Source of the DNA: Haliotis rubra
Taxonomy: Eukaryota
NCBI RefSeq assembly: GCF_003918875.1
Contig: NW_025765137.1
Coordinates: forward strand, 186,001-250,000
DNA length: 64,000 nucleotides
Direction of reading: 5' to 3'
A program made the position numbers and the translations under genes. A model generated the notes under the pieces. It was not told the origin of the DNA and did no database searches. It worked only from the letters and a program-made list of their open reading frames with translations. Positions 392-48,000 of the stretch are shown piece by piece. Position 1 is the first letter of the stretch, and every line of letters starts with the position of its first letter.

Positions 392-1646
392 TCAGAAATC
401 CGTGGCACTGGAACAGCTATCAGTGTTCCACCATTTATTCACATCATGGTAAGTATTTCCGAATCTCTCTAAATCATGAAGTTTCACACAAATATCACAC
501 AACGATGAATCTAATGTTGACTTCGGATCTGTGATAGTATACTGTGATTTCCGCCTCAATATTTCAGCATATGCCGTATTATTGGAATCTAAATATTTCA
601 AATGATCGGCAAGTTTCTCTGGAGATGAAAAATCGGCTGTGTCGATGTACGTGCCCTTAGGAAGAAGGTTTCCATAGCTGGCCCCACCCCTAACCACGGG
701 GATAATATCCAAACTGTAGCTCCTAAACACCTTTTCTGTCAGGTAGCCTCGACACAGTGAATTCTCAAGCGCCAAATAAAACTTGTATGTCGTTTGTTGT
801 AGATTATTACAGCTGTTAGGTCCGGAGTTTCCACACTTGAGGGGTCCACATCCACCATATATATCAACGCTGATGAATTGCTGGAGTTTTTTCACGTAGT
901 CGTCGCGTTTTGACCGAGCATTGCAATGACTTACCAACCACATGACGGGTTTACTTTTCTTCTCAGTGATCGACTGAAAATCTCGAACATCCGCTGTTGG
1001 TTTAGGCAGGAGCACGAAATACGGGCATACAATATCGGAGTCATATCTGAACGTCATCGTCCAATTAAACCGATCATTCCATCTATTGAAGTCCCATGGA
1101 GCCTCGTGTGCAAAAAATATCCACATCTGATTGGCTGGTTTTGGTGGTGGAGTATCATTATCAATCGACAGGACATAAAAGACGACAGCATCGGCTTGAG
1201 GGAGAAGTTTATGGTCACCTGATAATCTACAATTTTGCAATCGGCAGTTCTCCAAACTGTCCTTGTACCTCGTCTCAAACGTATGCCATGAAGGCATGTT
1301 GTATATAATGATCAGTTTCTCGTCTGTCTTATTTTGTGTGAATATTTTTTCAACGCCCGTGAGATTATAACGTGTCTTCTGGCGAAATTTGTCATTTGGG
1401 AACTGCAACACAGGGGACAGGAAATATGGGTGGTTGTCCTCGCCGTTTGGCCATACAAGAAGCGATGATGTGTCATTTTCGAACCTTGAAATCGAAGAAA
1501 CCATACTTGAATACGAGGCAAGTCGTCTGGGACGCTTTGACTTTTCTGTTTGCTCTGAAGACGTTTGTGAGCGTGCTCCATATTAGAAACACACACAAGA
1601 CTGCGGATGTCCAGAACAATAGACGTCTGTTTCTCCGGCATACCAT
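392..1646 (-). CDS. Alpha-1,3-fucosyltransferase (GT10), type II Golgi membrane protein; single coding exon, frameshifted between TM anchor and catalytic domain as assembled
   Basis: ORF 392-1504 has the GT10 motifs ADAVVF, QMWIFFAHEAP, FNWTMTFRYDSDIVCPY, WLVSHC..R..Y...L...VDIYGGCG, YKFYLALENSLCRGYLTEK, IPVVRG, YIDTADFSSPEKLA and LCDIC. An overlapping frame from ATG 1646 (MVCRRNRRLLFWTSAVLCVFLIWS) supplies the basic tail plus signal anchor and is preceded by an acceptor-like gtttcag|ATG. Confidence 0.9.
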
Positions 1647-27057: not shown

Positions 27058-30000
27058 CTGAAAGGTGAGAGAGTGAGTTTTTAGCAACCTACCTGCAAAA
27101 TCACTGCAGCGGACATGAGAAATGGGCTTCACACATTGCACCCAAGTGGGGAATTGACCCTGGGTCTTTGGCGTGACAAGCGAACACTTTAACCACAAGG
27201 GTACCCCACCACCAAGGTGAGTAAGAAGCTGAGTATATTATTTTACTTATATCATAATGAATGAGATTTGAAACCAAAATCATATGTTCCTGGCATGCCT
27301 AAGGTATTGGGGGAAAAAAAAGAGAGACAGGTGCACCCACATTCTTTGGTATAGAGTGTTGCTTCTAACATTGATCACTGGATTGCCTAGTCTATTCATG
27401 ATTTTTATAGGCATCATCAAGCATGAAAACAAGCAAGTAAAACATTTCGTGGGATTGACAACTCAACTTACCCACGTTTGACCATAAAGATGTACCATGC
27501 CAGTACTGATATTATGACAAGCAGGATCACTGCCAGAACTATCAGCCCGATCATCCACGACTCAAAGCCATCACAGTTCGGCTTGTTTTCTGGACATGCA
27601 CAGTAGTATCTGTTGACATCGTTATAGCAGGTATATGGCCAACTGCAAGGGCTGCTGAAGCACTCGTCCACATCCTGCTCGCATCGACTCCCCGTCCAGC
27701 CCGGTGCGCATGCACAGGTGTAGTAGCGGTCAAAACTTTCAGCCCTTCGCTGGTCGTTGCATGTGTACAGACTCTCGTTTCTGCCTGCAGTCAGATAACA
27801 GTTAATGTTTTTATATTTTAACAGACCTGTGATCTGGGTTATAAGATCTTCATCATTCTGAACTTACATTAGCATGTTCCTCATTCGGAACTTACATAAG
27901 CGCATTCAGTTGCTCTGAACTCACATAAACATGTTAGTCATTCTAAATTACATGAGTGTGTTCAGTCGTTCTCAACTAACATAAACATGTTAGTCATTCT
28001 AAATTACACGAGTGTGTTCAGTCGTTCTCAACTAACATGAAACCCATGAAGATCTAGGTTAGATCTTCAGTAAACCATGCTTCTTGGCAATTAACGGGTT
28101 TTGGGTGGTCAGGTTCGCTGACTTCGTAGACACATGTCATTGTATCCCAATTGCGTAGATTCATGATCATGCTGTTGATCACTGGATTGTCTGGTCCAGA
28201 CTCGATTATTTACAGACCGCTGCCATATAACTGGAATATTGCTGAGTACAGCATAAAACTAAACTCACTCACTCGCTCACTTGCTGAACAAACATGAACA
28301 TGAGGTTCTTGAGACGGGTTTACTCCCAAAAGTTAGGCGGCTGATTTTTTTTGCTGGCGCTTTGGTGCCTGACTCATTTGGTGTCATTTTACCTGATGAA
28401 GGGGCAAGGATTAGCCCAGAAACGTTGAAGAAAAAGAAGTTGACATCCATAATATTTTGTCTTAAACATGAACATGTTCAGTCGTTCTGAACTTACTTGA
28501 ACATGTTCCGTCGTTCTGGCAAGGCCTGGCCATGACAGCCAGTCTGACTGTGATGACATCGGAGTAGACTCCCGCCTTATCCTGAGTGTACATCCGGACC
28601 TCGTCGTACCCAGTGTAACCAGTGTCTGGGATGTACTGGAATGTTCTGTATATCCAGCTGACTGCAGTGGGGGAGTGAGGCAGAGACAAGTTGGAGCAAA
28701 GGATGCCAGTCTGGAAGAAAGTTGTGGCATGGAACATGGGTGGGAAAACAGGAAAAAGGTGGAATGATAGGTGAAATGGTGTTTAAACTTGTGTTCCAGA
28801 TATTTTCACTAATACAAGTGATATGCCGACATGAGTGTGTTGCTGCTTGTACTTTTCCTTCTGAGATATAACATGGCTATGCTACTGAGACACTAAATCC
28901 ATATCATATGTTGTTATGCTTCAATTACATCCCTCATTTTGAAAGAGGGAAGCTTAATATAATAAACTCAGGTTATCAAGTGTTCGACTAAATGAGCAAT
29001 GATCCAAGCTTTGGTGGATGATGTACACCTGTAGCCAAGTCACACATTGCTATCATCCAACCCTCCTTAAACTGCTGAAGTCAGCATCAGGTGCCCAGGA
29101 TCATTACCCTGGACCTACAACAGGCAGGTCAATATCCTAACCAACCCGTGAAGATCAAGGTTAGAATTGATCTTCAGTAACTCATGCTTGTCGTAAAAGG
29201 TGATTGATGGAATTGGGTTGTCAGGCTGGCTGACTTGGTTGACACGTGTCATCGTATCCCAACTGAGTAGATCGATGCTCATGCTGTTGATCACTGGACT
29301 GTCTGGTCCAAATTTGTTTATTTACAGACTGCTGCCATATAGCTGGAATATTGCTGAGTGTGGCGTAAAACTAAACTCACTCAATATCCTTACCGTTTCT
29401 GCCGAGCAGTTTGGCACCTGTGCTGACTCGTCATCATATGTGAGCGTCCCATTGCCGGGCTGGGTGAAGTACATTGTCAAATTCTCAGCAGGGTCAACGT
29501 CATAAGCACCGAACATCCACTCGTAGGTGATGGAGCTGTCGTTGACAAGGTTTTGCTCGATTAGTGTCTGCAAATACAAAGACATACATACAGGGACATG
29601 ATTCACATAAATCTCAAGGAATGTATTGTGTGAATGCCATCAACAATCCCGGCAAAATTATTTTTACCAACAATACATTGGTTCTACAATATACAGGTTT
29701 GAAAAGAATGTGTGATTTGTTTGTGGCTACCGCTGGACTCTGGACACCAGAAACGGGGTTCACACAATGTACCCATGTGGGGAATCGAACCCGGGTCTTT
29801 AGCAGACATTTTAACAATTAGGCCCCTTGTTCTGAAATGAAGATAAAAAAATGGTTGGCACAATCTCATGTATTTTGTCGTTAACCATGCCTTGCCCCAC
29901 ATCCACTCACCATGATAGGCGCAGTTGGGTCAGCCAGAATGAGGCTAACTCCTCCACTGAAGGCGAACACGCTGGGAGCATCGTTGTCTGCTGTGACCTG

Positions 30001-33000
30001 GATGGCGATGATGACAAGGGTGGAGGCGGCGGGGATGTCCACAACATCCACCTCGTAAAGGACGACCGGAACAGTAAAGGTTCCGTAGTAGTTCAAGGCC
30101 GGTGTGAAGGTCAAGCTGGAAGGAACATGAAGCTGCATCAGACATGGCGTGAGTGAGTGAGCTAGTTCTTGAGTGAGATATTATTTTTCTATCAGTTACT
30201 TTGAAAATATTTCCACGATAAATATATGATACCGTAGCAATTTTTACTCACATTACATCATCTCCTACTCACACCATCACATCCCCTACTCACACCATCA
30301 CCAGCCCCTACTCACACCATCATCAGCCCCCACTCACACCATCATCAGCCCCCACTCACACCACACCAGCCCCCACTCACACCATCATCAGCCCCCACTC
30401 ACACCATCATCATCCCCCCACTCACACCATCATCAGCCCCCCCTCACTCACACCTCACACCAGCCCCCTACTCACACCATCATCAGCCCCCTACTCACAC
30501 CATCATCAGCCCCCCACTCACACCATCACCAGCCCCCTCACTACACACCACCACCATCCCTCACTCACACCATCACCAGCCCCTACTGACACCATCACCA
30601 GCCTCCCACTCACACCACCACCAGCCCTACACTCACACCACCACCATCCCTTTTATCACTTCACACCATCACCAGCCCCAACTCACACCACCACCATCCC
30701 TCACTCACACCATCACCTACACCACACCATCACCAGCCCCCACTCACACCATCACCAGCCCTAACTTCACACTCACATCCACCACCATCCCCCCACTCAC
30801 ACCACACCAGCCCTAACTCACACCACCACTACCATCTCACTCACACTATCACCAGCCCCTAACTCACACCATCACTCAGCCCCTACTCACACCATCATCA
30901 GCCCCCACTTCTCACACCATCACTATCCTCACTCCACCTATCACTCAGCTCCCTACTCACACCATCACCAGCCCTAAATCACACCATCATCAGCCCTCAC
31001 TCACACCCACCACTTATCCCTACTCAGCACTCACACCATCACTAGCTCTACCACACCATCACCACTCCTTCACACTATCATCAGCCCCACACTCACACCA
31101 TCACCAGTCCCTCTATCACACCATCACCATCCCTTCACACCATCACACCATCATCAGCCCCCACTCACACCATCACCAGCCCCTCATTCACACCATCACC
31201 AGCCCCCACTCACACCATCATCAGCCCCCCACTACACACCATCACAGTCCCCACTCACACCATCACCAGCTCACTCACACCATCACCAGCCTCTACTCAC
31301 ATCCCCTTCCACACCAGCTCACCACTCCACCCCACTCTCACACCATCACCAGCCCCCACTCACACCATCACCAGCCCCCACTCACACCACACCAGCCTTA
31401 CTCACTCACACCATCACTCCTCACACTCACACTCACCACCAGCCCTAACTCACTCACATCACCTACTCACACCATCACCAGCCTTAACTAACACACACAC
31501 CATCACCAGCCCCTACTGACACCACACTAGCTCTCATCCTTACCACACACAATCACCAGCCCCTACTCACACCACACCAGCTCCAACTAAAGCACACACC
31601 ACCATCCCTTACTGTACCTCTCTACACACCAGCTCCTAACACTCACACCACACCAGCCCCTACTAACACCACCACCACACCAGCCCTATCCTTTTTACTT
31701 CACACCACACCAGCCCCTACTCACACCACAACCATCCCTACTCACACCATCACCACCAGCCCCTACTACACACCACAACCATCCCAACTCCACACCACCC
31801 TACTACACAGCCCCTACTCACACCACCACAAGCCCCAACTCACACTCACACTCAGCCCTTACTAACACCACCACTATCCCTTACTCACACCACACCAGCC
31901 CCTACTTCACACCACACACCCTTTCTCTCACACCACACCAGCCCTAGTCACACCACACACACCCCCTAACTCACACCACCACCAGCCCCTACTAACACTA
32001 CATACCAGCTCCAACTACTACACCATCACACCAGCCCCTACTCACACCCACACCAGCCCTACTCACACCACACACACCACAACCATCCCTTACTACACAC
32101 ACCACACCAGCCCCCTACTTTCACACCACACACCAGCCCCAACTCACACCACACACACCATCCCTACTTCACACCACCACTCACTCTTACTTTACCTACT
32201 CACACCACACCAGCCCCTACTAACACCACACAACCATCCCTTACTCACACCACACACCAGCCCCTACTACACCACACCAGCCCTACTACACCACACCACC
32301 CCTACTACACACACTACACTATCCCCTACTCACACCACACCAGCCCCTACTCACACCACACCAGCCCCTACTCACACCACACCAGCCCCTACTACCACAC
32401 CATCCCCTACTAACACCATCACCAGCCCCTACTCACACCACACACCAGCCCCTACTCACACCACACAGCCCCACTCACACCCAGTGCCCCTACTCACACA
32501 ATCACCAGCCCCTACTCACACCACCACCATCCCTTACTCACACCATACCAGCTCCAACTCACACCACACCAGCCCCAACTCACACCACACCCAGCCCCAA
32601 CTCACACCACACCAGCCCCTACTGACACAATCACCAGCCCCTACTCACCACCCTCACACACCATCACACCACACCTCACCATCCCTTACTCACACCATAC
32701 CAGCTCCAACTCACCACCACACATCCCCTACTCACACCACACCACCAGCCCCAACTAACTCACCACACCATCACCAGCCCCTACTCACACCACTCACCAG
32801 CCCTACTGACACCTCACCACCAGCTCCCAACTAACACCACCACACCAGCCCCTTACTGGACACTACACACCACCAGCCCCCCTACTAATACCATCACCCC
32901 CATCACTCAGCCCCTACTCACACCACACCAGCCCCTACTAACACCACACACCATCCCTTACTCACATCACACCAGCCCCTACTCACACCACACCAGCCCC

Positions 33001-36000
33001 TACTACACACCAACTCACACTCACACCAGCTCCTACTCACACCACACCAGCCCCTACTAACACCATCACCAGCACCATCACCCTTGCACTCACACCCATC
33101 ACCAGCCCCTACTAACACCATCACCATCCCTTACTCACACCACACCAGCCCCTACTAACACCATCACCAGCCCCTACTAACACCATCACCAGCCCCAACT
33201 CACACCACACCAGCCCCTACTCACACCACACCAGCCCCAACTCACACCACACCAGCCCCTACTCACACCACACCAGCTCCTACTCACACCACCACCAGCC
33301 CCTACTCACACCACCACCAGCCCCTACTCACACCATCACCAGCCCCAACTCACACCACACCAGCCCCTACTCACACCACACCAGCCCCAACTCACACCAC
33401 ACCAGCCCCAACTCACACCACACCAGCCCCTACTCACACCACACCAGCTCCTACTCACACCACCACCAGCCCCTACTCACACCACCACCAGCCCCTACTC
33501 ACAGGCCATTTGGTGTCAGCGTCAGGTCCCTTGTACTTGCTACATCAGATGATGGGTCGATTCTAAACTTGACTATGTCCCCATCAGGATCAACGCCAGA
33601 CAGCTGGTAAATCAGGGTGCCTTGAAAAGAAGGCAAAACTCATCAATATAATCCAATTATATACATATTTGTTGACAACCAATTAGGCTAACTTTACACA
33701 ACAAGGTATGCATCACTGAGTCCATCCTCCAAGTGTGAAATTATTACTCCAGACAGTGATCAGTCTACCTTCAAACTTTATTCTCAACAGCCTAAGAAGT
33801 TTACATCCCAACTTGCCTTTCAAGGTACGAGAACGTTAACAATCACATTACCACATCCTACTTGGTACCCCTTCATTGCTAGTTGAACAGAGGGATTCAT
33901 GTTTGCCCCTGTTTTTTACATCAGTGCAGATGAATGCTTATATTTGAACAGTATCTGTGTTCTACAGGTGTTATACATTTTTAATATAAATAAAATGTTT
34001 TTAGCAATATTAACCCCCCCAAAATCAGGCATATTGATATTCTAACAATGCTGACAATACAAATTTCTTCTCAAATGTTCATTTTCATTTTGTCATGAAA
34101 ATCAATGAAGTCAACAGATCAATATTGATTCAATAACTGACAGGTTAATTTTACAGTGTGGCAGCAAAGAACTCCATAAACAGTGTAAATGTAACTTACT
34201 GATCGAGATGTGCATAAGGAAATAAAGAGCCTACCAGAATCTTCCTCCATTGAGACAGAGGTTGTGGATGTCAACTGTGGTGGATCATTAGGTATGGATG
34301 CACGGACATTGGTCACTACAAAGAGTGTTTCATGACTGAAGAAAGTGTCACTTGGGGTACCGCTTGTTGATTCAGTCGCCCTGGTATTGCAAACCTGAAA
34401 AAAGTAAACAAATAGTGAAACCGGCACTGAAGTTCACCTGGGTGTGGGGCGGTGGGGTAGCCTAGTGGTTAAAGCATTTGCTTGTCATGCCGAAGACCCG
34501 GGTTCCATTCCCTACATGGGTACAATGTGTGAAGTCTATTTCTGGTATCCCCCGCCGTGAGATTACTAGAATGTTGATAAATTCCGCGTTAAACAAAATC
34601 GCTCACTCACTCTTCTGGGTGTGTAACCAACAATTAAAATATCAGTAAAGACATAAACTTGAAAATGTTATTCAAAAACCCTACTGCAACAAATGACATG
34701 TGTCAACCAAGTCAGTGAACCTGTCCACCCGATCCTGTTAGTTGCCTCTTACGACAAGCATGGGTTGCTGAAAGCCAATTCTAACCCGGATCTGTACAGG
34801 TACAACAACAGTTACCTGGGTAGGGTTGGGTGACAGGTGCTTGGGAACCTGGGTAGCAGATATGGACTCATCCTAGCCCCAGAACACAGCACGCAATTGC
34901 GTTCAGTAACATGTGAGATCAGAACAATCGCTTAATCAGCAAGTAATGATTTACCTTGACTGTTATCTGGTTGGTGGTCGAACTGCGGACTTCAGTGTTC
35001 AACTCGAACCTGCATGTGGCGTTGCTTTGAAACCATTTCTGCTTGGCTAAAATGAAAACAAGGTAACATTATTGCAGAACACTTATTCAGAAATAATGAA
35101 AAACCAGCAGCTTCAGTCACACAGATTTAATAAGGATGTGAATGGGTGTTTAAAATATATCACTGCATGTTAACAGCAATCTGGGGGGACAATGTAATTT
35201 ACTCATATTGTCATAGCATCCATCACAAAAGCCTAGTGGTTAAAGCATTTGCTTGTCACACCGAAGGCCTGTCTTGATTCTCCACATGGGTACAATGTGT
35301 GAAACTTATTTCTGGTGTTCCCCGCTGTGATATTGCTAAAAGCAGAGTAAAACTAACTCAGTCAATCAATTTAACAAAACAACCACAAAAAGCGAATCAG
35401 GATTATTAGAGTTCATTATTTTGAACCTGCCCTTGAGATGCTTTTTATTAACATGTTAGAGTTTTGGAATAGAGAACAAACAACAAACCTGGATCCCAGT
35501 GCAACAACATGGCGACATCATCCTGGTTGTCTGGGTTGAAGGGGAAGGTCACAGTGAGCGGACCAGGCATTGCAAGACCACCAACACTGGTGACAGAGAA
35601 GGAGATGTCGGTGTCACTGTAGTTGACTCTTCGTCTGAGAATCCGGTCCAGGAAGGCAGGGTCAGGCATCGATGTGGCAGGGTTGGTGATGTATGGAACG
35701 AACTCTGTCGATGCATCAGACTTGTATTCCTTTTCCAGATCCTGCTTTGTCAGCTGGGTTAAAACAATACTCTGTCCAGGCATCATCCCTGAAAACAAGC
35801 AAATGACATTTACTCAGACAGTGCTTGGGACAACTGGTAACCTGGCTAGTCTGATCATTTTTGCATATAAATCAAACAGTTAATGTTATCTTACTCATGG
35901 AAATCATAAAAACATGGGCAGTGGGGTACCCTTCTTGTTAAAGCGTTTGCTTGTCACGTCAAAGACCCGGGTTTGATTCCCCATATATGTACAATGTTTG

Positions 36001-39000
36001 AAGCCCATATTCGGTGTCCCCAATCATGATTGCTGGAACACTGCTAAAGAGCAGTGTAAAACCATACTCACTTACTCACTGCAACCAGAACTGGACTCTT
36101 GTGGATAAAGCGTTTGCTTGTCATGCCAAATACGTGGGTTCAATTCCCAACATATCTACAATGTTTGAAGCCCATTTCTGGTGTCCCCAGTCATGATTGC
36201 TGGAATAGTGCTAAAGAGCGGCATAAAGCCCAGCTCACTCATTACAACATCCTGAACTGAACTCTAGAGCTTGATCCAATCTCAGACCTTTCAACAAAGG
36301 TGCCTCTTAAAGATATAACCATGTGGAATCTACTCACCATCCGGTGTCTGAACAGTGATATCCCCTGTTGCCCGCTTCTTCCGGGTATTTCCAGATCCTC
36401 CAATAGAAGCCGTAACAGATGACCCATTTGTCGATGTCACCAACGTTGACTTGTCCGTCTCGACGACCGAGGATCCGAGGAGCTTCCTTGTGCACAACTC
36501 TGCCTCGTTACAAAGCTTCATGAAAATAAACATCTCCATACCCGGTGGCATAGTAAAGGCGCTGGCATCTGTGTAGTTCATGGTGTCATTATATTCGGGT
36601 CTGTATTCACTCAACTTTCTAATATTGATGTCGTCTATCTTCAAGAAACCGTCCTTGATAGTGACTGTCCCAGACATGTTGTAGCCCACCCACGTGCAGG
36701 GGAAGATGTCATCAATGGAGGCCTCAGAACTACCCACACAGAAATCTGTTCACAAAAGATTACAGTAAGACATAGAGATTAATGAAAACAATGTATTTTC
36801 TGGGTACTTGGGAGAATGATTAGTACTTTTCTCTGTTGTTTAATATCGCACTCAGTAATATTAAAGTTATTTGATAATAATCAATTATGGACCAGACGAT
36901 CCAGTGACAGGTATTAAGAGCATCTATACCATCAGGGCACTCTTAGATGCTATCAACCATGTCGTCAAACCTGATCCATTCGATCTTCTCTTATGACCAT
37001 CACAAACCCGTGAAGATCAGGGTTAGAATTGATCTTCAGTAATCCATGCTTGTCGTAAAAGGCGACTAACAGGATCAAGTTGATTTTTTGACACATGTCA
37101 TCGTATCCCAATTGCGTAGATCGATGCTCATGCTGTTGATCACTGGATTGTTTGGTCCAGATTCTATTACTTACAGACCGCTGCCATATAGCTGGAATAT
37201 TGCTGCGTTAAACCAATCGATCCATCAGTCATTACACGCTACGTTATATATGTATCTCATTATTAACACCACTCTACTTTTACAGCTACACATAGAGGTT
37301 GAGGATTGTCTGTGTCAGCAGCTCTAACTTCATTAGTAATCTGATAGCGTGGAATGGTATGACAGAAAAACAATGCTAAATACAAGACTGGACACAGTAT
37401 CCGACTCACCATATCGCCTCACAGATTCATCCGGACTGACGGTCCATGACGCGCTGACAGAGTTCTGGTCCTGGGTTTTCAAAGAGTTGGGTGGCACGAC
37501 TGTGTCACCCAGGGACTCAGCGCCCTCTATTGTCATGTTGACATCTTCAGCAGGTGGAGGCTCAAGAAGAACTGTCACACCTTCAGGGAACATAACATGA
37601 TCATTGAAACACATTCTGAGGAGATTTTTGTGTTGTGTGAGACAGTATTAAGGACATTTAATCACCATTTGTCAATGTGATCTGGGACAACACATGAGAT
37701 GAAGCTCATACATTTACCACTTTAGCCATGGTGCTAACAAGCCTAGAAACATTAACAAGGTGACCCTGGACTCAAACCCACAATCACAGAATTGTGGTAT
37801 GCCAAGGTGCCACAACCTCGAATTCCTTCAGGCAGTAAGTGAGGGACTTAGTATGGTTTTATGCCTCTTTTAGCATTATTCCAGCTACACCATGGCAGGG
37901 AACACCAAGAAGAGTTTCATACATGTAACCAATGTTAGGAATGGATCTTAGGTCTTCTGTGTGATTAATGAACACTCTAACCACTAGGCTACCTCATGCC
38001 CCCCCTTAAAATACTGAACACTGGAACAACTCTACCCCCATTTAGTTTCTGACTTGGAATTTGACTGAATGGGCAGTGGGGTAGCCTAGTGGTAAAAATG
38101 TTGACTCATCATTGCTGAAGACCCAGGTTTGATTCCCACATGGGTGCAATGTCTTAAGCCCATTTCTGGTGTCCCTTTTGTGATATTGATGAAATATTGC
38201 TACAAAAGCAGTGCAAAACCCAACTCACTCACTCACTCAACTTAAGGTTTCTACTGAGATCAGGCCAGATACTGCAACCGTCAACCCAAAACCCACAAAG
38301 TACTGCAAAGTAGCCACCTGATTGTCATTAGACAGCTCTCATTATAAACATGGGTAACTTGGGTCTTATTCTGTTCCTAGTACCTGTGGTAATCTATGTC
38401 TATACACATCTACTGTACTAAAAAAGAAAATATTATTACCCCTTGTGTCTATGTAATTTGTCTTCAGTCCACCTCCGTTTGTACAGTTGATAGAGATGTA
38501 GTATGTTGTGTTATGTTCCAGGGTGAGACCACTCTTGATGGCACCAGGATTTTCCCCACTAGAGGTCGCTTCCATGATGTCAGTTCCGCCTGGTGTGGTT
38601 CCAATAGACCATTGGTAATCCTAGAAAAATACAGCAGAGGAACTGTGAATGAAGTATCCACTAAAAGACCCTCTACCATTTGTTTCAGGTGATTTCTTAA
38701 AGGTTCCATCTTTGAGAGACACTTTTCAAAGATGATACATTTTCTGATGACTGATCATTACAATTACATTTCTTGATTCTTAATGAAGTATCCACTAAAA
38801 GACCCTCTACCATTTGTTTCAGGTGATTTCTTAAAGGTTCCATCTTTGAGAGACACTTTTCAAAGATGATACATTTTCTGATGACTGATCATTACAATTA
38901 CATTTCTTGATCCCCTACTTTAGGTGGAGAGTATGTGTTAATCTAACCATAAACATAAGAGATTTAATGCTACAAGTTTATTGCTCAAAGATAACTACTG

Positions 39001-42000
39001 TAAATGTTGGTCACAACACTCCATATGATAAACAAAGTACAATACCAGGTACAATACCAAGTACCATACCAGATACAATAGCAAGTACAAAACCAGGTGA
39101 AATACCAAGTACAATACCAGGTAAAATACCAAGTACAATCACCAAGTATCATACCAGGTAGAAAGTGCGGAATTATTCACATGTCCTGATTTTAACCCCA
39201 TTACAATTATTTGGGGAAATATAATATAAAGTGAGGATCAGATGGGAAAAACTTACCACGACTTCACTCGTATTGTCACTACACTTCCACACAGCTTTGA
39301 TTGTGTCATTTGACCCTTGGTACCTCACAGGGGTGAACTCGCCCTGAGATACGTCAAAGTATAAGAATACATCCTCCTCAAAGACCGGCGGCGTGGTGTC
39401 AACATAGAAACCATCCGATGAGGCAATGGCAGATGCCCCAGAACCTAACACTGCCTTCACTGCAACAAGAGGATGTCAGAATTCAAAGAAAGGGTATTTG
39501 GAAAAATAGACAGTACATAACTGCTAAAATATCCTTAGGCCAGACCAAATTTATTTCTTGTTTTACAGATTTTTGTTGTCAGAAAACCTTGAGGCAGGAG
39601 GAAAAAATAAATAAAACAAAAATCACCAGTCAGAGTAATATTCCTTATAAATGCTAAAAGTATTTTACTTCTGGCAAGTTATGGAGTGCATATGGGGCAA
39701 AAAACAATCTAAATACATTTTCTTGCACATTTACATTTTTAGCCAATAAAAATATTAAAATTATATTTTTTGAGCGGGGAAAATTAATTTTTATATTTTT
39801 TCTTATTTTTGAAAAAACACGACCGGCGGGCGGGTGCGTAAAACAAGAAATACAATTGGTCTGGCCTAAGCAAGACAAGAAACAGTTGTTATGCATATCA
39901 AAAATTAAAAAAAATCCATTGGGTCATGCAAAACTAGTCTTTCATAATAAGAGGGATGTGTGGATGGGTGGTGGCAACAAGACTGGGTGGTGTTGGGACA
40001 GTAGGATGGGGTCATATTTTACGGACAGCATTTCAGAACTAGGTAAAACTGACAACTCCTTGACAATTGAAGTACAATGCATCTCTTACCTGTTAGGTAG
40101 TGAATGACTGGTTTGAACTCATTATCAATAAGGGATGTTTCTGTGAGAGTGAGGTTGGTGAGGGAGATGATCACTTGGCTGGTGGTGGAGCTGTCACAGA
40201 CGTTGTCACAGGTGTACACGTCACATGGCTTCAGACATGGGATGCAGGGAGTGTGTACCTAAATTCATGAAATATCATGCAATATGCAAGAGATAAGACA
40301 AATGGATCATTCTTATTGAGTAAACTACTGTTATCATGAACTCAAAGGGACCACTAAGTTTAGTTCAAATAACCAGAGTTTGTTACACCCATTTCCACTT
40401 AAACATACAGCAAGCAGTCTGAACAAAAGAAAGTTTGTATAAAAATTGTACTTTATTTAACAGCACAAAGTGTATTTTCAAGATGTCTACAATGACAATT
40501 ATTTAGTTGACCCTTTGCTACAATGCAACATTATGAGGTGTAGTGTTTTGCTTGTTGATTACATCTGCACTCAGCAATATTCCAGCTATATGACATCAGT
40601 CTGTGAATAATGAAGTCTGGACCAGACAATCAGGTGATGAACAGCATGATAATCGATCTGCTCAGTTGGTAGTGACCTCATTAATGATGGAGATGTCATA
40701 GCATGCACGTTTGATATAAAACATGTTTAACATGCTCAAGCTATAATATTCAATTAAGGGATCAGATAGAAATCAACATAATCCCTACATATTGTTTATT
40801 CATAATAATCAGCTGGTGGAGGGGTAGCCTTGTGGTTAAAGCTGTACTTGCTCATTTCTGCGGTTTCCTGCTATGATATTGCTGTAATATTGCTAAAAGT
40901 GGTGTAAAAACTAAACTCACTCACACACTCATAATAATAATAATAATAATAACCCATATTAATTAACAATCAGGGCTTAAAAGTTTGTGTTACAACGTAT
41001 TTCAAATCTTACCGGTTGAAAGTCCACCATGTTTGATAACCCAGTGGCAGATCCTATAGCAGCCTCATATCGAATGATGGCATTATTGCCTCCCTTGAAA
41101 GGGTCACCATAGCGACACAGCTTGTTTTTCTCCGGCGGCATGACGAGATCTCGGAAAGAAGCCTCTGTGCTCCACACTTTAATCTTTCCCTCCGCATCTC
41201 TGCCGGTTTCGGGAAGGTAATTCTTGTGGTTCCATACGCCCATGTAGAGTTTAGTTTGGGGGGAAAGATGGGGGATGCCACATTGTTCCGATATTAACTC
41301 CCCATCCATGTGGACTGTCATGCACCATGTAAGCTGTTGAATATAGATACAGTAGTGAGTCAGTTTTTATGTAAATACTCTCTGTGGTTGTTACAGCCAG
41401 GTTGCCATTGTACCAAACAATCTTTGTGCAATGACTTTCGGATGTCAAGTGTATGGGATTTAGGATCACGTTAACACTAAGTACACTTTGTGCAATGGTG
41501 CCCTGACATGGAAGGTAAGTCTAAACCTTACTACGTATGTGGTGAAACTGGTCCAAAAGTGTTTGTTTGTTAATTACCACCGCAATATTCCAGCTAAACG
41601 GTGGCGGTCGGTAAATAATTGAGTCATAATCAACAGCGTGAGCATTGATCTATGCAATTGGGATACAATGCCATGTGTCAACCATGTCGGCGAGCATGTC
41701 CACCCGACCCAATAGTCGCCTCTTACGACAAGCATGGGTAACTGAAGATCAATTCTAACACGGATTTTCACGGGTCCTGGTACAGAGGCTGACAAATCGT
41801 GATCATGATGGAGGAGAATATGAGACAGATTCAAGATCAGGAACAATGATTTCTTCTACATCCAGGTGAAAGCCTTTCTGTCACTCAGTCAACATGGCAT
41901 GGCATGTCAGCTTAAAGCTTCACGAGTGAGGAAGCCCAAAGTGATGCAGTCTCAGCTTTGGTGAAACTCAAATGCACAGGTATGGTTCTGACAAACCAAC

Positions 42001-45000
42001 TATCATAACCAAAGCAAATCTGGTATCTGAACCAATCGATCCAATTCTTAAATTATCTAACCATTTAAACTTGGCAACACAATTGATGCAGAGGTACTCT
42101 GAAAGAGGTAGAAGGAGTTCTTTATATATTTTTTTAAAGTTTCAGATCTGTCAATTTGTCTGTATTATTTTCTAAAAATCTGAGTGGCACTGCGGAACAA
42201 ACCTTCCCAACTGTGACTGCTCAATGGTCAGTGCCAACTGAGTCCCGCAATCAACTTTATTGTGAGTGAAGAATTGACAAAGCTTACCTCAGAGTCCCGA
42301 GCTTCTGGTCTCTGTATGAAGAAGTTGATGCTGTAGGCATGGTATGAGGCCGATGGGTCTATATTGAGATCTCGCACATCCACCATTGGTATATTCAAAA
42401 GATCAGCATAGCTGCACCATGCAACTAGTCTTCCTGGTTTATCTCCACCTTTGGGGACAGAACAGAGAATAAAACACTGAAGACGCATCACATTTATATC
42501 AATCACACACACACTGAAGATACTGATTTCTTCTCTGAGTTTTTGTTGTTTGATGTAGGTTATAATTCACATTTATGTAAGCTTAATGTTCTTGTAAATA
42601 TCATTCTTACATAATGGTATCACTTTCAGTTCAATTTGAAGGAGGCAGGTGACTTTTAAGATAGCATGTTTGATATATCGATTGAACATTGGGAACATCA
42701 TGTCCTCATCAACACATGAATTGGTTGTTTGATTTTTAACATCACACTCAGCAATTTTCCAGCAGCCTGTAAACAATTGAGCCTGAACCATACAAACCAC
42801 TGATTGATTTTATGTGCAAACCCCCAAGCTATTTGGGGAATAATGCCACATTGAGTCTGGACCAGACAATCTACTGATCAACGACCCGTGAAGATCCGGG
42901 GTAGAATAGGTCTTCAGCAACCCATGCTTGCCACAAAAGGCGACTATGCTTGTCATAAGAGGCGACTAACAGGATCGGGTGGTCAGGCTCGCTGACTTGG
43001 TTGACACATCATTCGTTCCCAATTGCGCAGATCGATGCTCATGCTGTTGATCACTGGATTGTCTGGTCCAGACTCGATTATTTACAGACCGCCGCCATAT
43101 AGCTGGAATATTGCTGAATGCGGCGTAAAACTAAACTCACTCACTCACTCTACTGATCAACAGTATGAGTAACGATCTACACAACTGAAACATCGAAACA
43201 AGTATCAAAAAGTCTCACTCACAAAATAAGAGATGTTGTTATCCATAATGTTTGTCAATATTGTTATTGACTCACCAGCAAATATCTGAAGCCCACAGGA
43301 ACTTCTTGGCTCCCTCTTTATTTGAGCTACTTCAGCGCCATCTGTGATGGAGTCTGTCTTCCTTAAGGCTTCCTTCTCCTCCTTCGTCAACTTGACCACT
43401 TCATACTCTACAGCAGGGTCGTCACCAACGATGGATCGTTTTGACAGGCTCCTGTTGATTTCTTTCACTTTTTTGTACACGGTACAGTTGCACTTGCAGC
43501 TCTGGTTGAGAAAAACAGACATATGATAATCAATTAATATTCCTTAAAAAAACATTATAAGATAAGATAAACCAAACAACTTGACACCCTTTAAAGTTAA
43601 GACTGATCAACAATAACACAATGTTGGTGGTGTATTTGGAGCAGATAATGGCCAGTGATGTTTGTAAGGCAACATTTTATTCACAACTGATCCAATGTAG
43701 ATTAGTGAAAGGACCAAAATTCTAACTGGATCTTCAAAGGAGGTGGGGTAGCCTAGTGGTTAAGGCATTTGCTCATCACTCTGAAGACCTGGGTTCGATT
43801 CCCCACATGGTGGGTTCTGATGGCGATAACACGCAGTTCTCCTACTTTCTAATTCCATAAATTGGACTACCCTTCACTACCCAAATTTTACAACTTAAGT
43901 TTGAATGATTCCATTCCAACTACTGCTCTTGTTATCACGAAGTTGTCTTACAGTTGGAATTGGGTCGACAAAGCAGCAGGCGCAGTTGCTGTCCTCCCAT
44001 GGTGGCACAGGGGTGTAGTCGTAGTCAATGATGTAGTCTTCAGGCCCGTCCCAGAACAGAACGCTGGTCACAACCTTGCCGTCACCTTTTGCCGACTTGA
44101 TAGAAAACTGCAAGAAATGTCACTTTCGTTATTATCACATCCCTCACAGATATAAACTTATTATATGCAGGTACTGTGTAGGAAACTCTCAGTGAAGGAG
44201 CAAAGGCATTTGTTTCCACTGTATTTTTATCCAACACATTAAAATCTTGAAACACCCCACCATTGCTATTATTTAACAGGAAGGCACCAGTGGCGTAGTA
44301 TGGAAGGCATCGCCATTCTGCGAACAGAGGTGCACCCTGTTAGTGTTGAAGAATTCTACAACCTACAATCTGCATCACCATGAATTTTCCTATGATGTTA
44401 GCTTCAACATTTCAACATGTACATTAATCTTAACAAGACGTATCTAAAATAAAGGCTGAAAAATTGTACCATCTGAATATCAGAAACTGAATTGAGTTAT
44501 GCACCTCATACTCTCCTCCATTGACGAGGTCAGCATCTCTAAAGTAGGTTCCAGACATCATGGCATCTTTCTTGGTGTCTCTGGTAAGTTTAATGTCCAT
44601 GGAGTCGCCACTGGTAGTGCGTTGGACATAGGCAGCGCTGTAGGTTAAGCTCAAACTGGTGTTATGGCTGTCGAAGTTCCGGTTCGATTCGAAGAATTTC
44701 CATCCTGCATCATTGAATTTGATTGGTCGGACTGGACAGGCAGACGTGTCAGGCACTGGATGGTGCAGGAATGTTCCTGGAAAACAGTTAATGTAGGTTC
44801 AAGTACTGCTGATTTGTTTCAACGATGCATTAATACAGTCTTCATGAGTCAAGAAGAGAGCTGAGTGTAATCTGGAGATCAAGTTTGCCAGCATTCACAT
44901 CATGGAGGTTCGTGAGAAAATAGTTCATGTTGTTCTCCTCTATTTTCCATTTCAAATGCTATGAACTGGACTAAATTCTTGAGAACAACTGGTATTATGG

Positions 45001-48000
45001 TATTATTGTTGACCCAGTGTAATATTGCAACTTGATAGTGACGTCTTCTGTGATTGTATGTGTATTGTTCTTTAATGCTGCACTCAGCAATATTCCAGCT
45101 ATGAAAGTGGCCGTTCAGTATTTATGGCTAGTGGGGGTGATGATGATTTTGAGGGGTTCACCCATTTTGTTCATGGGAGGTGGGTGGGGGGGAAGGGTTC
45201 ATCAATTTTGTACACATGCACTGGGTGTGTGTGTGTGTGTGTGTGTATGGTGTTTCAGCAATTTTGTACTTTTAAATATTAGAAAATTATGCATATGGGG
45301 GTGTGGGGGTGTGTGTGACTTACTTTGTACATACATTTTAGGGGGGTCATTCACATTGTACATGCTTCTCTATAAAAATCATCATCGCCCCCACTAGCCA
45401 TAAATTATGAACGGTCCCTAATAGTCTGCACCTAAAAATCTAGTGATTGGTATTGTATAGGTTACTGGGTTCTATTCCAACATGGAATCACCATGATAGG
45501 GCTGAGCTAGGATGGTGCATAAATGGCTCAAGCTTTAAGTGGAGAAATATTTTGGGCCTGATGATATGCATGCTCAGCTCACTGTCCCTGTTATTTTCAA
45601 AACTGATTTTAACATATTTTTTAAAATATAAACACCACTTCTCTGTTAAAACCATCCTGCTCGATCTTATGTATGGTGACATAAAACATACATTCTTTTA
45701 CCTTGATGTGTATTCAACTGACCTTTAACCTCACTAGAAGTTCCGATCCAGCTGATATCCTTTGTGAAGTCCACTCCATCCACGATTCTCCCTGGGGTGG
45801 GGGCGGAGTTGTCGTACAGAGCTGGAGGGGAGTCAGTTATACTCCTCAGTCCTGCGTTGTTCTCAGTCATCAGTCGGACTATGTATGGGGTGTCCCTCTG
45901 TTTAACAAACAACAGAAGGCAGGCTACAGGACAGAAATATAATACCTAACATGAGTACTATTCCATTCTTGTAAATAAAAATTGTTATGGTGATGTGATG
46001 TGATGGTGATCATGGTGTGGATGATTTTCCATTCATTGGACATAATGGGGCAAGGTTGACTGATTATGTAACATGCACTCCAGAGCACTTTCAATACTGT
46101 GAGTGAGTGAGTGAGTTAGGTTTTGCACCACTTTTAGCAATAATCCAGCAACATCACGTTCGGGGCACCAGAAATAAACTTTGCAAATATTTGCACCCAT
46201 GAAGGGAATCAACCCTGATCTTCATTGTGATGAGTGAACACTTTAACCTCTTGGCTACCCCACCACCCCTGCGCTGCAGAAATGTCATGGTCATAATCAT
46301 GTAAGTGAGTGAGTGAGTCTGGTTTTATGCCGCATTTAGCAATATTCCAGCAACATCACGGCAGGGATACCAGAAATGGGCTTCAGAAATTGTACCCATG
46401 AAGGAAATCGAGTCCGGGTCTTCATCGTGATGCATGAACACTTTAACCACAAGGCTACCCCACCGCCCCCATAATCATGTAAGAATCACCACTGACCTCC
46501 ATGTTGATATCTATGAATTTGTAGGAGTTGTACTCTGCTTCTATCTCAATGCTTGGCACCACCACCTCCTCCACTGCGCCATCTTGACAGGTCGCACGCC
46601 TCAGCAAGGACACGTGGTAGCATCGCAGCCCAGACTCCTCATCTCTGTAGTCCTTCCAGTGGGCTTGGAGACTTCGGCTGCTGGCGGCGTAACTGGCCAC
46701 CTAAAATACAAGTGAGTGAGTGAGTTCGCTGCTTTTAGCAATATTCATGCAATATCAAGTTGAACAATTGAAAAGAAACCATTTTGATGGAGGTCATAGG
46801 TTATAAAGCAAAATATAATTTTTATGATAAAATTGATATTGTATACTTATCCTGACTCATGATTTGAAGGGAGATAGCATATAGCATGAGTCAGGATAAG
46901 AAAACATGTTTCAGTTGAAACACGTGAAATAACAAACTTAACTCAATTCCATGTATCACCGTCTAATATAACATACTGTAGTTAAAATAATCAGTTCTTG
47001 AGAATAATATCTTGATGTTTACCAATTATATAACTTTACTTAGCAATCCTGCTTACCAGATCATAGTAGGGCCCTGTTCTGATCTTGCCTTGTGTTGGTG
47101 GTGTGATGTCCACCCTGAATCTGTGGTACGTCATGTTGCACTCACCGGCCTTGTCAGCACCTGGAGCGCATTTCAGTTATTCCATACAAGGATTGCAGAA
47201 ATATAAATGTCAATTACACAAAAATATTGAAGCACGTTTGATGCAGCAGTCGTTTTTAAAGTGTGGGTTTAAAAAAATAATTGTAGAAAAAAATGGAACA
47301 ATATTTTACACAAGTGAGACTTACCAATGACCCATGCGTAATATTCGCCATTCTGTGCCAGAGTCAAATTGTCAAATTTCTTGTAGGTATCCGTGCCCAC
47401 ATTCTGGATGTCGATAACATTAAACAAAGACGACCTTGTCTCATCAGTCATAGATCCGCGCTCCGTCTGCAACAAATCACAAAAGTTATCATAACAAATT
47501 GTTCTATATGAAAATGAAATATTACATATTGAGTTCCTTTAGTTGTTGACTTATGTGAAGTGAGTGAGTGAGTAAGTTGTGTCCAATGCTGCTTTGAACA
47601 TTATTCCAATTATATCACAAGTCAGCCTGATGTGTGAAGAAAGCCCCAGGTGATGTGTTACACATTTACCATGGCCACTTGTGAAAACCATGATTTTGGT
47701 GCCAACAAACCTGGAATAATGATAATAATAATAATAGTGTATATCAATAATGTCCACATATCCACATTCGTAAGCATGCTCTTGGCACTGACACATTATT
47801 ACCCCCGATAACCCAAGCTGCCTGTGAGGCTCTAGAAGGTTATGGTCACATGACTTATCCCACCAGGTACCCATTTTCTGCTGGGTGAACAGAGGCAATT
47901 TTGAACAAACTCACAAGCCTAAGGTGAGACCACATGTACATTGCATCACATGTGCTTCATTGTAGGGAGGACTGAAGTCCAGGAAACCCTCAGGAGTCAA

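What the first reader, a model, noticed from the sequence alone, without database searches (positions are those of the whole stretch)
41013..44776. Catalytically dead lichenase-like (GH16) domain inserted inside an FN3-like repeat
Seen: the repeat beginning LYDNSAPTPGRIVDG...SEVKG is interrupted by about 350 aa and resumes at AIIRYEAAIGS. The insert reads SGTYF...GGEYEFSIKSAKGDGKVVTSVLFWDGP and DLNIDPSASYHAYSINF...VHMDGELI...IP...TKLYMGVWN. Knowledge: these parallel Bacillus-type beta-1,3-1,4-glucanase strands (YG.YEV.MK.AK..G.VSSFF.Y.GP; DLGFDA...YH.YAF.W...YVDG....IP..PGKIMMNLWN). The position expected for EIDIEF appears to be SCGLQIF, with no catalytic glutamates, as in non-enzymatic GNBP/beta-GRP proteins. 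A Cys-rich loop (CACC...CKCNC) with RSLSKR sits in the insert. Inference: a glucan or algal-polysaccharide binding module displayed on a membrane stalk.
Basis: partly seen in the sequence, partly recalled or inferred. Interest (0 to 1): 0.8.

Follow-up and report, generated by a model that had tools for sequence, protein, structure and literature searches.

The report
Dead lichenase-like domain inside FN3 repeat
One fibronectin-III-like repeat of a giant abalone-type membrane protein is split by a ~350-residue domain that has the fold of a bacterial lichenase (GH16 glucanase) but no catalytic acids. It looks like a previously undescribed, probably ligand-binding, pseudo-enzyme module shared by molluscs, acorn worms and amphioxus.

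Summary
Six minus-strand exons (45897-41013) splice with canonical GT/AG sites into one open frame, and intron-skipping transcript contigs from two related organisms join exactly these exons. The frame encodes one FN3-like repeat whose B-C loop carries a ~350-aa insert.

The insert is a GH16 beta-jelly roll. An AlphaFold model of the 90.6%-identical Haliotis asinina orthologue superposes on Bacillus lichenases at Z 21.9, rmsd 2.7 Å, 201 of 212 residues. All 50 Foldseek matches listed are GH16. Profile-profile comparison with lichenases gives 96.7% (E 4.6e-10) for the N-terminal half and 88% (E 2.9e-6) for the C-terminal half. Against laminarinase-type GH16 it gives only 7% and 1%.

The strand in the position of WDEIDIEF reads SSCGLQIF. 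No family member carries an acidic residue within the motif C-G-x-Q-x-[F/Y/L].

A roughly 90-100-aa extra loop (a six-Cys cluster plus a disordered linker holding RSLSKR) sits just before that strand.

Homologues with the same nested domain occur in gastropods, bivalves, Ptychodera and Branchiostoma. The host protein has EGF-like modules and a transmembrane helix.

Fold, loss of catalysis and nesting are well supported. Glycan binding remains an inference. I class it as a new variant of a known kind (non-catalytic GH16), probably independent of GNBP/beta-GRP.

The parts
45723..45897 (-). Exon A: end of the preceding FN3-like repeat and N-terminal part of the split repeat (LYDNSAPTPGRIVDG...SEVKG). 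Its phase-1 donor lies exactly at the start of the insert.
44505..44776 (-). Exon B: N-terminal strands of the GH16-like jelly roll (TFLHHPVPDTSACPVRP ... SGTYFRDADLVNGGEYE). This exon, with the same boundaries, recurs as ORF fragments in many unnamed ENA, JGI and Logan contigs.
43952..44107 (-). Exon C: strands FSIKSAKG / KVVTSVLFWDGP (equivalent to lichenase YEVSMKPAK / [11 protein letters not shown]), then EDYIIDYDY and the first half of the Cys cluster (CACC).
43276..43501 (-). Exon D: second half of the Cys cluster (CKCNC); a poorly modelled charged linker with RSLSKR (43453-43436) and KREPR (43318-43304); then SSCGLQIF (43303-43280), the strand in the place of the catalytic WDEIDIEF strand.
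42288..42448 (-). Exon E: strands RLVAWCSY, MVDVRDL and DPSASYHAYSINF (equivalent to lichenase [26 protein letters not shown]).
41013..41333 (-). Exon F: the last GH16-like strands (WCMTVHMDGELI, GIP, KLYMGVWN, EASFRDLVM), the connector LCRYGDPFKGG, and resumption of the FN3-like repeat (AIIRYEAAIGS...DFQP).
40090..40258 (-). Exon G: continuation of the split FN3-like repeat, with a second conserved 5-Cys insertion (HTPCIPCLKPCDVYTCDNVC).
39257..39459 (-). Exon H: last strands of the split repeat (KAVLGSGASAIASSDGFYVD, ending at 39398) and the start of the next repeat (TTPPVFEED).
27471..27848 (-). Exon of the same gene with EGF-like modules and the single transmembrane helix (WMIGLIVLAVILLVIISVLAWYIFMV KRG). 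It shows that the nested domain is extracellular on a membrane-anchored protein.

Best explanation
The finding is a non-catalytic, lichenase-type GH16 beta-jelly-roll domain nested in the B-C loop of one FN3-like repeat. The repeat belongs to the ectodomain of a very large single-pass membrane protein: many FN3-like repeats, a furin-type RKKR site, a cadherin/Big_9-like module, EGF-like modules, a transmembrane helix and a cytoplasmic tail.

Shown:
- the exon structure and its transcription;
- the GH16 fold;
- a specific affinity to lichenases rather than laminarinases;
- absence of the E-x-D-x-E acids on the equivalent strand in every homologue;
- a roughly 90-100-aa expansion of the loop that precedes that strand, made of a six-Cys cluster and a poorly modelled linker. 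The linker is mucin-like and Thr-rich in bivalves and Ptychodera. In four Haliotis sequences it is charged and carries a conserved N-x-S...SKRS dibasic site;
- conservation of the nested arrangement from molluscs to hemichordates and cephalochordates.

Inferred: the domain no longer cuts sugars and serves as a binding module. Its ligand is most likely a glycan held in the remnant of the substrate groove. That groove keeps aromatic or basic residues at the alignment positions of lichenase Y94, W184 and R65. R65 is kept in the molluscan sequences except the two Potamilus ones, and is lost in the deuterostomes. The enlarged loop reshapes or covers the groove. The KR site may allow convertase cleavage of that loop in abalone. 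The two halves would stay together through the sheet and a probable C217-C233 disulfide.
For: Splicing and expression.

Orthologue: P0019 of H. asinina is 90.6% identical over 437 aa.

Fold: the model has pLDDT 76 and pTM 0.72, with the core at 85-95. All 50 Foldseek matches listed are GH16; the best are lichenases at E 1e-10 and TM 0.76. VIA-align gives Z 21.9, rmsd 2.7, 201/212 residues and 20% identity to 1mac. The seven top entries are lichenases; other GH16 reach Z 20.1 or less at 8-15% identity. ESM Atlas neighbours are mostly GH16 clusters.

Sequence: the family HMM against the PDB gives only six hits, all lichenases, best E 0.013. Five of 25 members touch Pfam PF00722 below threshold, best E 3.9e-4. 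hhalign against 14 natural lichenases gives 96.7% (E 4.6e-10) for the N half and 88.3% (E 2.9e-6) for the C half. Against laminarinase-type GH16 it gives 7.4% and 1.0%. The positive control, lichenase against laminarinase, gives 98.8%.

Dead site: the strand reads C-G-x-Q-x-[F/Y/L] in ten of the eleven homologues that cover it (S-F-G-F-Q-L-H in Ptychodera), with no Glu or Asp within the motif.

Disulfides: Cys 217/233 and 279/293 are lost together in Ptychodera, and 279/293 also in Branchiostoma.

Nesting.

Membrane anchor.

Constraint: 17 synonymous against 18 non-synonymous changes among the differences listed for the relative X5, most of them conservative.
Against: No binding or activity data exist, and no ligand is known.

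The -1 aromatic platform F92 of lichenases is aliphatic here (L/V/M). R65 is not kept in the two Potamilus sequences or in the deuterostome homologues. The groove is therefore only partly conserved.

In insect GNBPs, from my own knowledge, the dead GH16 domain is not the main glucan binder, so analogy does not guarantee lectin function.

The model is of the orthologue, not of the window protein itself. The linker and the first 17 residues are poorly modelled.
Confidence: 0.8

Rival explanations
1. The jelly roll is a protein-protein interaction or purely architectural module, like LamG, MAM or pentraxin-type ConA-like domains in adhesion receptors. It would have no sugar ligand, and the groove would be filled or covered by its own Cys-rich loop.
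For: The catalytic acids and the -1 aromatic platform are gone, and R65 is not kept in the two Potamilus sequences or in deuterostomes. A roughly 90-100-aa loop with a moderately well modelled Cys-rich part sits at the edge of the groove. The host is an adhesion-type protein with FN3, cadherin-like and EGF modules.
Against: Invariant W232 and W309-N310, and the nearly invariant Y/W at the Y94 position, are the residues that line the groove in lichenases. They could also be kept for structural reasons. No protein partner is known.
Confidence: 0.3
2. The domain is still an enzyme, a hydrolase or transglycosylase, that uses non-canonical residues. Candidates are the acidic stretch EDYIIDYDY that follows LFWDGP.
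For: EDYIIDYDY resembles E-I-D-I-E-F superficially and lies close to the expected place.
Against: The stretch is not conserved: it reads DMSLLDTFHF in Potamilus and DGVLGDFNVP in Ptychodera. In the model it forms only a two-residue bridge, while SSCGLQIF occupies the catalytic-strand position. No family member has an E-x-D-x-E pattern anywhere near it.
Confidence: 0.04
3. The insert is an annotation or assembly artefact, or a decaying pseudo-exon block captured by chance in an intron of the FN3 gene.
For: None beyond the unusual architecture.
Against: Transcript contigs from two organisms contain the exons spliced in frame. The open frame is conserved at 90.6% with H. asinina and is recognisable in bivalves, Ptychodera and Branchiostoma at the same position in the same repeat. 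Synonymous changes are enriched relative to the number of synonymous sites.
Confidence: 0.01

Closest known systems
Bacterial 1,3-1,4-beta-glucanases (lichenases, subfamily GH16_21; PDB 1mac, 1gbg, 1u0a, 3o5s, 1byh)
   Same: Same fold over essentially the whole enzyme: 201 of 212 residues, Z 21.9, rmsd 2.7 Å, about 20% identity. Same minimal ~210-residue core without the long loops of other GH16. Shared motifs are Y-G-x-Y-E-V-x-x-K / [22 protein letters not shown], I-P and I-M-M-N-x-W-N. The N and C termini are adjacent in this fold. Circularly permuted lichenases 1ajk and 1ajo are among the HMM hits. This is what allows insertion into a loop of another domain.
   Different: No E105/D107/E109: the strand reads C-G-x-Q-x-F. 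The loop before it (residues 91-100 in lichenases, the -1 subsite loop according to PMC6827312) is expanded by roughly 90-100 aa, with six Cys and a poorly modelled linker. There are extra disulfides. The domain is nested inside an animal FN3-like repeat rather than being a free secreted enzyme. Lichenases are known from bacteria and chytrid fungi only (PMC6827312).
GNBP / beta-GRP / LGBP / CCF: non-catalytic GH16 proteins of invertebrate immunity (subfamily GH16_4)
   Same: Animal GH16-fold proteins that have lost one or both catalytic residues and act as recognition proteins rather than enzymes (PMC6827312).
   Different: Those are soluble proteins of the laminarinase-derived, beta-bulge (E-x-D-x-x-E) clade. 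The present domain gives only 7% and 1% hhalign probability against laminarinase-type profiles, compared with 97% and 88% against lichenase profiles. It is nested in a membrane protein. No true GH16_4 sequence or structure was available for direct comparison.
Plant EG16 and XTH (GH16_20 and relatives; PDB 5dze, 1umz)
   Same: Non-bulged GH16 related to lichenases, and the only large eukaryotic branch of that clade. The structural match is good: Z 19.5, rmsd 2.4 over 182 residues.
   Different: They are active enzymes with an intact E-x-D-x-E. Identity is lower (13-14%), and they have no nesting and no Cys-rich loop.
ConA-like (LamG, MAM, pentraxin) modules of adhesion receptors
   Same: A jelly-roll sandwich used as an extracellular binding module in large multi-domain membrane proteins.
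   Different: These families are different at the sequence and topology level. All structural matches listed here are GH16.

Membership tests
Glycoside hydrolase family 16 (fold and homology) | Beta-jelly-roll sandwich superposable on solved GH16 structures | tested here: met
   Z 21.9, rmsd 2.7, 201/212 residues with 1mac; all 50 Foldseek matches listed are GH16
Glycoside hydrolase family 16 (fold and homology) | Significant sequence-profile similarity to GH16 | tested here: met
   hhalign 96.7% (E 4.6e-10) and 88.3% (E 2.9e-6) against lichenase profiles. The only PDB HMM hits are lichenases, E 0.013. Pfam PF00722 stays below its gathering score: best 18 bits against a cut-off of 22, best E 3.9e-4.
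Glycoside hydrolase family 16 (enzyme) | Catalytic E-x-D-x(-x)-E motif on the central strand of the groove | tested here: not met
   The strand at that position reads SSCGLQIF. The motif is C-G-x-Q-x-[F/Y/L] in ten of the eleven homologues that cover it (S-F-G-F-Q-L-H in Ptychodera), with no acidic residue inside it.
Glycoside hydrolase family 16 (enzyme) | Hydrolysis or transglycosylation of beta-glycans | not testable with these tools
   Needs recombinant protein and assays
Lichenase subfamily GH16_21 | Short core of about 210 residues, closer to lichenases than to other GH16 | tested here: met
   Chain 1-212 of 1mac is covered. The seven best entries are lichenases at 18-21% identity, against 8-15% for the others. 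The profile contrast is against 81-82.
Lichenase subfamily GH16_21 | Non-bulged E-x-D-x-E and the conserved -1 loop (residues 91-100) with F92 | tested here: not met
   The motif is absent. The loop is replaced by a roughly 90-100-aa insertion. The F92 position is L, V or M.
GNBP / beta-GRP (GH16_4, non-catalytic) | Laminarinase-type (bulged) GH16 homology | tested here: not met
   hhalign 7.4% and 1.0% against a laminarinase-type profile built from nine natural sequences. This profile is only a proxy; no metazoan GH16_4 sequence was at hand.
GNBP / beta-GRP (GH16_4, non-catalytic) | Soluble protein with an N-terminal beta-1,3-glucan-binding domain | tested here: not met
   The host is a multi-FN3 transmembrane protein. 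No such Pfam domain was found in P0019, P0012 or P0021.
Fibronectin type III-like repeat (host domain) | Sequence membership of the split halves in the protein's FN3-like repeat family | tested here: met
   An HMM grown from a Pfam-fn3-positive repeat (P0012:1332-1417, E 1.7e-12) finds 180 repeats. It aligns the insert-deleted repeat over positions 3-120, E 4.7e-21. The three-dimensional packing of the two halves could not be checked. The N-terminal 25 residues have pLDDT below 50 in the 486-residue model.

The most novel reading that the evidence does not exclude
A lichenase-type (non-bulged) GH16 gene, otherwise known only from bacteria, chytrids and (as EG16/XTH) plants, entered the animal lineage before protostomes and deuterostomes split. 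It lost catalysis and was fixed as a nested sensor domain of a giant cell-surface receptor. The receptor would recognise mixed-linkage or algal/microbial beta-glycans. Its groove would be gated by a Cys-rich lid on a linker that is protease-cleavable in abalone and mucin-like in other lineages. This would be a second, independent origin of GH16-based glycan recognition in animals, beside GNBP/beta-GRP.
Probability: 0.15. Interest if true: 0.8.

Novelty: new variant of a known kind. Interest (0 to 1): 0.55.

Why it matters
Non-catalytic GH16 proteins (GNBP, beta-GRP, LGBP) are central pattern-recognition molecules of invertebrate immunity. All of them belong to the laminarinase-derived branch.

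This is a separate branch. It resembles lichenases, falls below Pfam's threshold, and is embedded as a domain within a domain in a large membrane protein conserved from molluscs to hemichordates and amphioxus.

It gives a concrete, foldable module of about 350 aa that can be tested for glycan recognition. That is relevant to grazing, settlement, host-microbe contact and matrix adhesion in marine invertebrates.

It is also a clean natural example of domain insertion, made possible by the adjacent termini of the lichenase fold. And it raises the question of how a lichenase-type GH16 came to be in bilaterians.

Tried and rejected
- Pfam on single exons found nothing.
- A word-index search with exon F alone found nothing, because of the length window.
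- An ESM-Atlas feature search with exon B alone gave only noise, pentapeptide repeats at 0.79.
- The C-terminal-half HMM against PDB sequences gave no GH16 hit, only chance matches at E 0.2 or above. The same half is recognised by profile-profile comparison.
- A scan of bacterial and archaeal genomes with the C-half alignment gave one chance match of the linker peptide LCRYGDPF, in a GH42 beta-galactosidase of a Lachnospiraceae MAG. No close prokaryotic relative was found this way, but this is weak evidence.
- My first guess, that IIDYDY after LFWDGP is the remnant of EIDIEF, was rejected. It is not conserved and does not occupy the strand position.
- A forced global hhalign to fix the register of the dead strand was uninformative there.
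- The representative-search hits P0002 (a low-complexity repeat protein, no aligned stretch) and P0016 (a bacterial repeat protein that matches only FNDGGWKYWDS) were set aside as spurious.
- Literature searches found no paper describing this nested domain.


Full report
**1. What is in the sequence**

The window is eukaryotic DNA with introns. The finding lies in a very large gene on the minus strand.

Six exons have AG acceptors and GT donors with compatible phases:
- A 45897-45723
- B 44776-44505
- C 44107-43952
- D 43501-43276
- E 42448-42288
- F 41333-41013

They join into one open 437-aa frame.

I laid public contigs on 40950-45950. This showed intron-skipping, hence RNA-derived, contigs that join exactly these exons:
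- X1 record 1 (3983 nt) covers F, E, D, B and A in consecutive record coordinates. A 156-nt gap in that record equals exon C.
- X2 record 9 joins D, C and B.
- X5 record 11 (7709 nt) comes from a related organism and covers F, D and B, with 7-12% of letters differing.

The D/E junction length in these contigs supports the form ...QIFAGGDKPG. The H. asinina gene model omits the two Gly.

Among the X5 differences that were listed, 17 are synonymous and 18 non-synonymous, most of them conservative. Non-synonymous sites are about three times more numerous than synonymous ones. This partial sample therefore indicates moderate purifying selection.

**2. Whose gene it is**

An exhaustive HMMER search with exon B found 17 proteins. 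Word searches from two of them found more.

The spliced window protein is 90.6% identical over 437 aa to an uncharacterized Haliotis asinina protein, P0019. The window is therefore from an abalone or a close relative. This is an inference from identity.

- Paralogues at 46-60% identity exist in H. rubra and H. rufescens: P0018, P0026, P0027 and P0001.
- Homologues at 29-36% exist in the bivalves Potamilus and Mytilus, in the hemichordate Ptychodera flava (P0021, and P0017 truncated), and in Branchiostoma (P0022).
- Twelve short ORFs that equal exon B, with the same boundaries, come from unnamed ENA, JGI and Logan contigs.

tblastn of P0019 on the window places its residues 29-1887 from 51434 down to 23711. 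Further repeats lie upstream to the window's end.

The protein contains many FN3-like repeats, an RKKR site, a Big_9/cadherin-like module, EGF-like modules, one transmembrane helix (27848-27471) and a tail.

**3. The repeat is truly split**

I grew an HMM of the protein family's own repeats from a repeat that Pfam recognises as fn3 (P0012:1332-1417, E 1.7e-12). After four rounds it finds 180 repeats.

In P0019 it tiles the chain repeat after repeat. The preceding repeat ends at residue 422 and the next starts at 904. Between them lies one repeat plus the insert.

With the insert removed in silico, the two halves align to HMM positions 3-120 in a single alignment (61.7 bits, E 4.7e-21). The junction falls between the strand '...isanW' and 'sgivkYevavG', which is in the B-C loop. 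The same repeat carries a second, smaller, conserved 5-Cys insertion in exon G.

I could not verify the three-dimensional packing of the two halves. In the 486-residue model the first 25 residues have pLDDT below 50.

**4. The insert is a GH16 jelly roll of the lichenase type**

I aligned the insert from 13 long homologues and 12 exon-B fragments (alignment A2). I then folded the H. asinina orthologue (P0019:447-800). The model has mean pLDDT 76 and pTM 0.72, with the beta core mostly at 85-95.

Structural evidence:
- Foldseek against the PDB: all 50 matches listed are GH16, led by Bacillus lichenases (E 1e-10, TM by target 0.71-0.76).
- VIA-align: 1mac scores Z 21.9, rmsd 2.7 Å, 201 of 212 residues aligned, 20% identity. 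The seven best entries are all lichenases at 18-21% identity. Other GH16 (laminarinases, carrageenases, agarases, EG16, XET) follow at Z 20.1 or less and 8-15% identity.
- ESM Atlas neighbours are mostly GH16 clusters.

Sequence evidence, independent of the model:
- An HMM of A2 searched against all PDB sequences returns only six hits at E up to 10. All six are lichenases, best E 0.013.
- Five of 25 members touch Pfam PF00722 below its threshold.

For a proper profile-profile test I fetched natural lichenase genes from metagenome contigs through the WDEIDIEF pattern. I fetched laminarinase-type GH16 genes from viral contigs through GEIDIME.

| Comparison (hhalign) | Probability | E-value |
|---|---|---|
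| Insert, N half (A2), against lichenases | 96.7% | 4.6e-10 |
| Insert, C half (A4), against lichenases | 88.3% | 2.9e-6 |
| Insert (A2) against laminarinase type | 7.4% | 0.0047 |
| Insert, C half (A4), against laminarinase type | 1.0% | 0.053 |
| Control: lichenases against laminarinase type | 98.8% | 1.3e-16 |

The domain is therefore specifically lichenase-like.

According to the GH16 subfamily roadmap (PMC6827312), metazoan GH16 and the non-catalytic binding proteins sit in GH16_3 and GH16_4, the bulged laminarinase-derived branch. Lichenases (GH16_21, about 210 residues) are bacterial, with a few in chytrids. That makes descent from a GNBP-type protein unlikely. One caveat remains: no true GH16_4 sequence or structure was available here.

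**5. The active site is gone**

From GGEYEFSIK onward, the model's ten strands map one to one, in order, onto the ten lichenase strants from YGLYEVSMK to the C terminus. HMMER and hhalign anchor the second, fourth, fifth, sixth, seventh, ninth and tenth of them. The strand between VVTSVLFWD and RLVAWCSY, which is the place of WDEIDIEF, is SSCGLQIF (window 43303-43280).

Across the family it reads C-G-x-Q-x-[F/Y/L] in ten of the eleven homologues that cover it, and S-F-G-F-Q-L-H in Ptychodera. No acidic residue lies within the motif in any member.

The exact register could not be fixed without coordinates. I cannot say whether C, L, I or G, Q, F replace E105, D107 and E109. The hydrophobic pattern favours the invariant G and Q facing the groove, but this is an inference.

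The tempting acidic stretch EDYIIDYDY after LFWDGP is not conserved and forms only a two-residue bridge.

Cys 217 and 233 are lost together in Ptychodera. Cys 279 and 293 are lost together in both Ptychodera and Branchiostoma. This suggests two cross-strand disulfides. The other pairings are open: there are 17 Cys in the whole split repeat.

**6. The extra loop**

About 90-100 residues lie between LFWDGP and the dead strand. They replace the roughly 7-residue loop that lines the -1 subsite in lichenases (PMC6827312). They comprise:
- a six-Cys cluster (CACC...CKCNC), modelled at pLDDT 61-82;
- a linker modelled at pLDDT 28-50.

The linker is Thr-rich and mucin-like in Potamilus, Mytilus, Ptychodera and one abalone paralogue. 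In four Haliotis sequences it is charged and carries a conserved N-x-S...S-K-R-S motif; in the window this reads RSLSKR|S. Cleavage there by a proprotein convertase is plausible but untested.

**7. Function**

Shown: an expressed, conserved, extracellular, membrane-tethered GH16-fold module without catalytic acids.

Inferred: a binding module, most likely for a glycan. Several positions that line the lichenase groove keep aromatic or basic character. I name these groove residues from my own recollection of the 1U0A complex.
- Y94 becomes W.
- W184-N185 are kept as W-N.
- R65 is kept in the molluscan sequences except the two Potamilus ones.

Other groove positions are lost:
- F92 becomes L, V or M.
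- E63 becomes an aromatic residue.
- R65 is lost in the deuterostomes.

A role as a protein-binding or architectural module is a serious rival (probability about 0.3).

**8. Novelty**

No paper in the searchable library describes this nested domain. All homologues are labelled uncharacterized. Pfam does not reach its threshold. I could not check whether superfamily-level annotation (ConA-like) already flags these entries in public databases.

I class it as a new variant of a known kind: a non-catalytic GH16 module that is lichenase-like, nested in an FN3 repeat, and old enough to be shared by protostomes and deuterostomes.

Noticed in passing
window 392-1504 (-): A single-exon ORF of 370 aa encodes a GT10 alpha-1,3-fucosyltransferase (Pfam Glyco_transf_10 E 8e-51, plus the N-terminal domain at 4e-21). 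It is a separate gene downstream of the large one.
   Followed up: partly
window 30114-33508 (intron between exons matching P0019 1390-1427 and 1430-1497): About 3.4 kb with GC 0.53-0.54 and GC skew -0.73 to -0.76 on the plus strand, a C-rich satellite-like block.
   Followed up: partly
window 41618-41784, 41952-42285, 42787-43287, 43622-43955, 44958-45458 (introns): Very high-copy interspersed repeats. Summed contig depth reaches up to 3.7e7 in the DNA run, and there are many false joints. They encode the recurrent pseudo-peptide ...GLSGPDSIIYRPPPYSWNIAECGVKLNS. They fill the introns around exons C to F.
   Followed up: no
window 43276/42448 junction (exons D/E): A tandem acceptor, AAAG|GTGGAG|AT. 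Transcript contigs of this species fit the upstream site (...FAGGDKPG). The H. asinina RefSeq-type model P0019 uses the site 6 nt downstream (...FADKPG).
   Followed up: partly
window 40090-40258 (exon G): The same FN3-like repeat carries a second insertion, a 5-Cys motif P-C-[IL]-P-C-x3-C-x4-C-x3-C. It is conserved from abalone to Ptychodera and Branchiostoma. Its function and pairing are unknown.
   Followed up: partly
window 36336-36746 (-): A canonical furin-type site, GSGNTRKKR|ATGD, further down the same protein. It is conserved in P0019 (STRKKRATGD) and, as RRKR or KYKR, in paralogues.
   Followed up: partly
P0001 residues ~770-810 (H. rufescens paralogue): A 32-residue segment (starting TTQPRPNIVPRFGGLFARLPNIRSPARQQK) interrupts the strand pair FSIK / VTSV. 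It is absent from all other homologues and is probably a retained intron in that gene model.
   Followed up: no
P0020 (Mytilus edulis) and P0022 (Branchiostoma): These gene models lack the C-G-x-Q-x-F strand and part of the Cys cluster, both of which M. galloprovincialis P0024 and P0025 have. They are likely missed exons rather than real losses.
   Followed up: no
L003, L005, L058, L062, L072 (metagenome contigs): Several bacterial contigs carry two lichenase-type GH16 modules about 860 nt apart in one reading frame (tandem GH16 domains).
   Followed up: no
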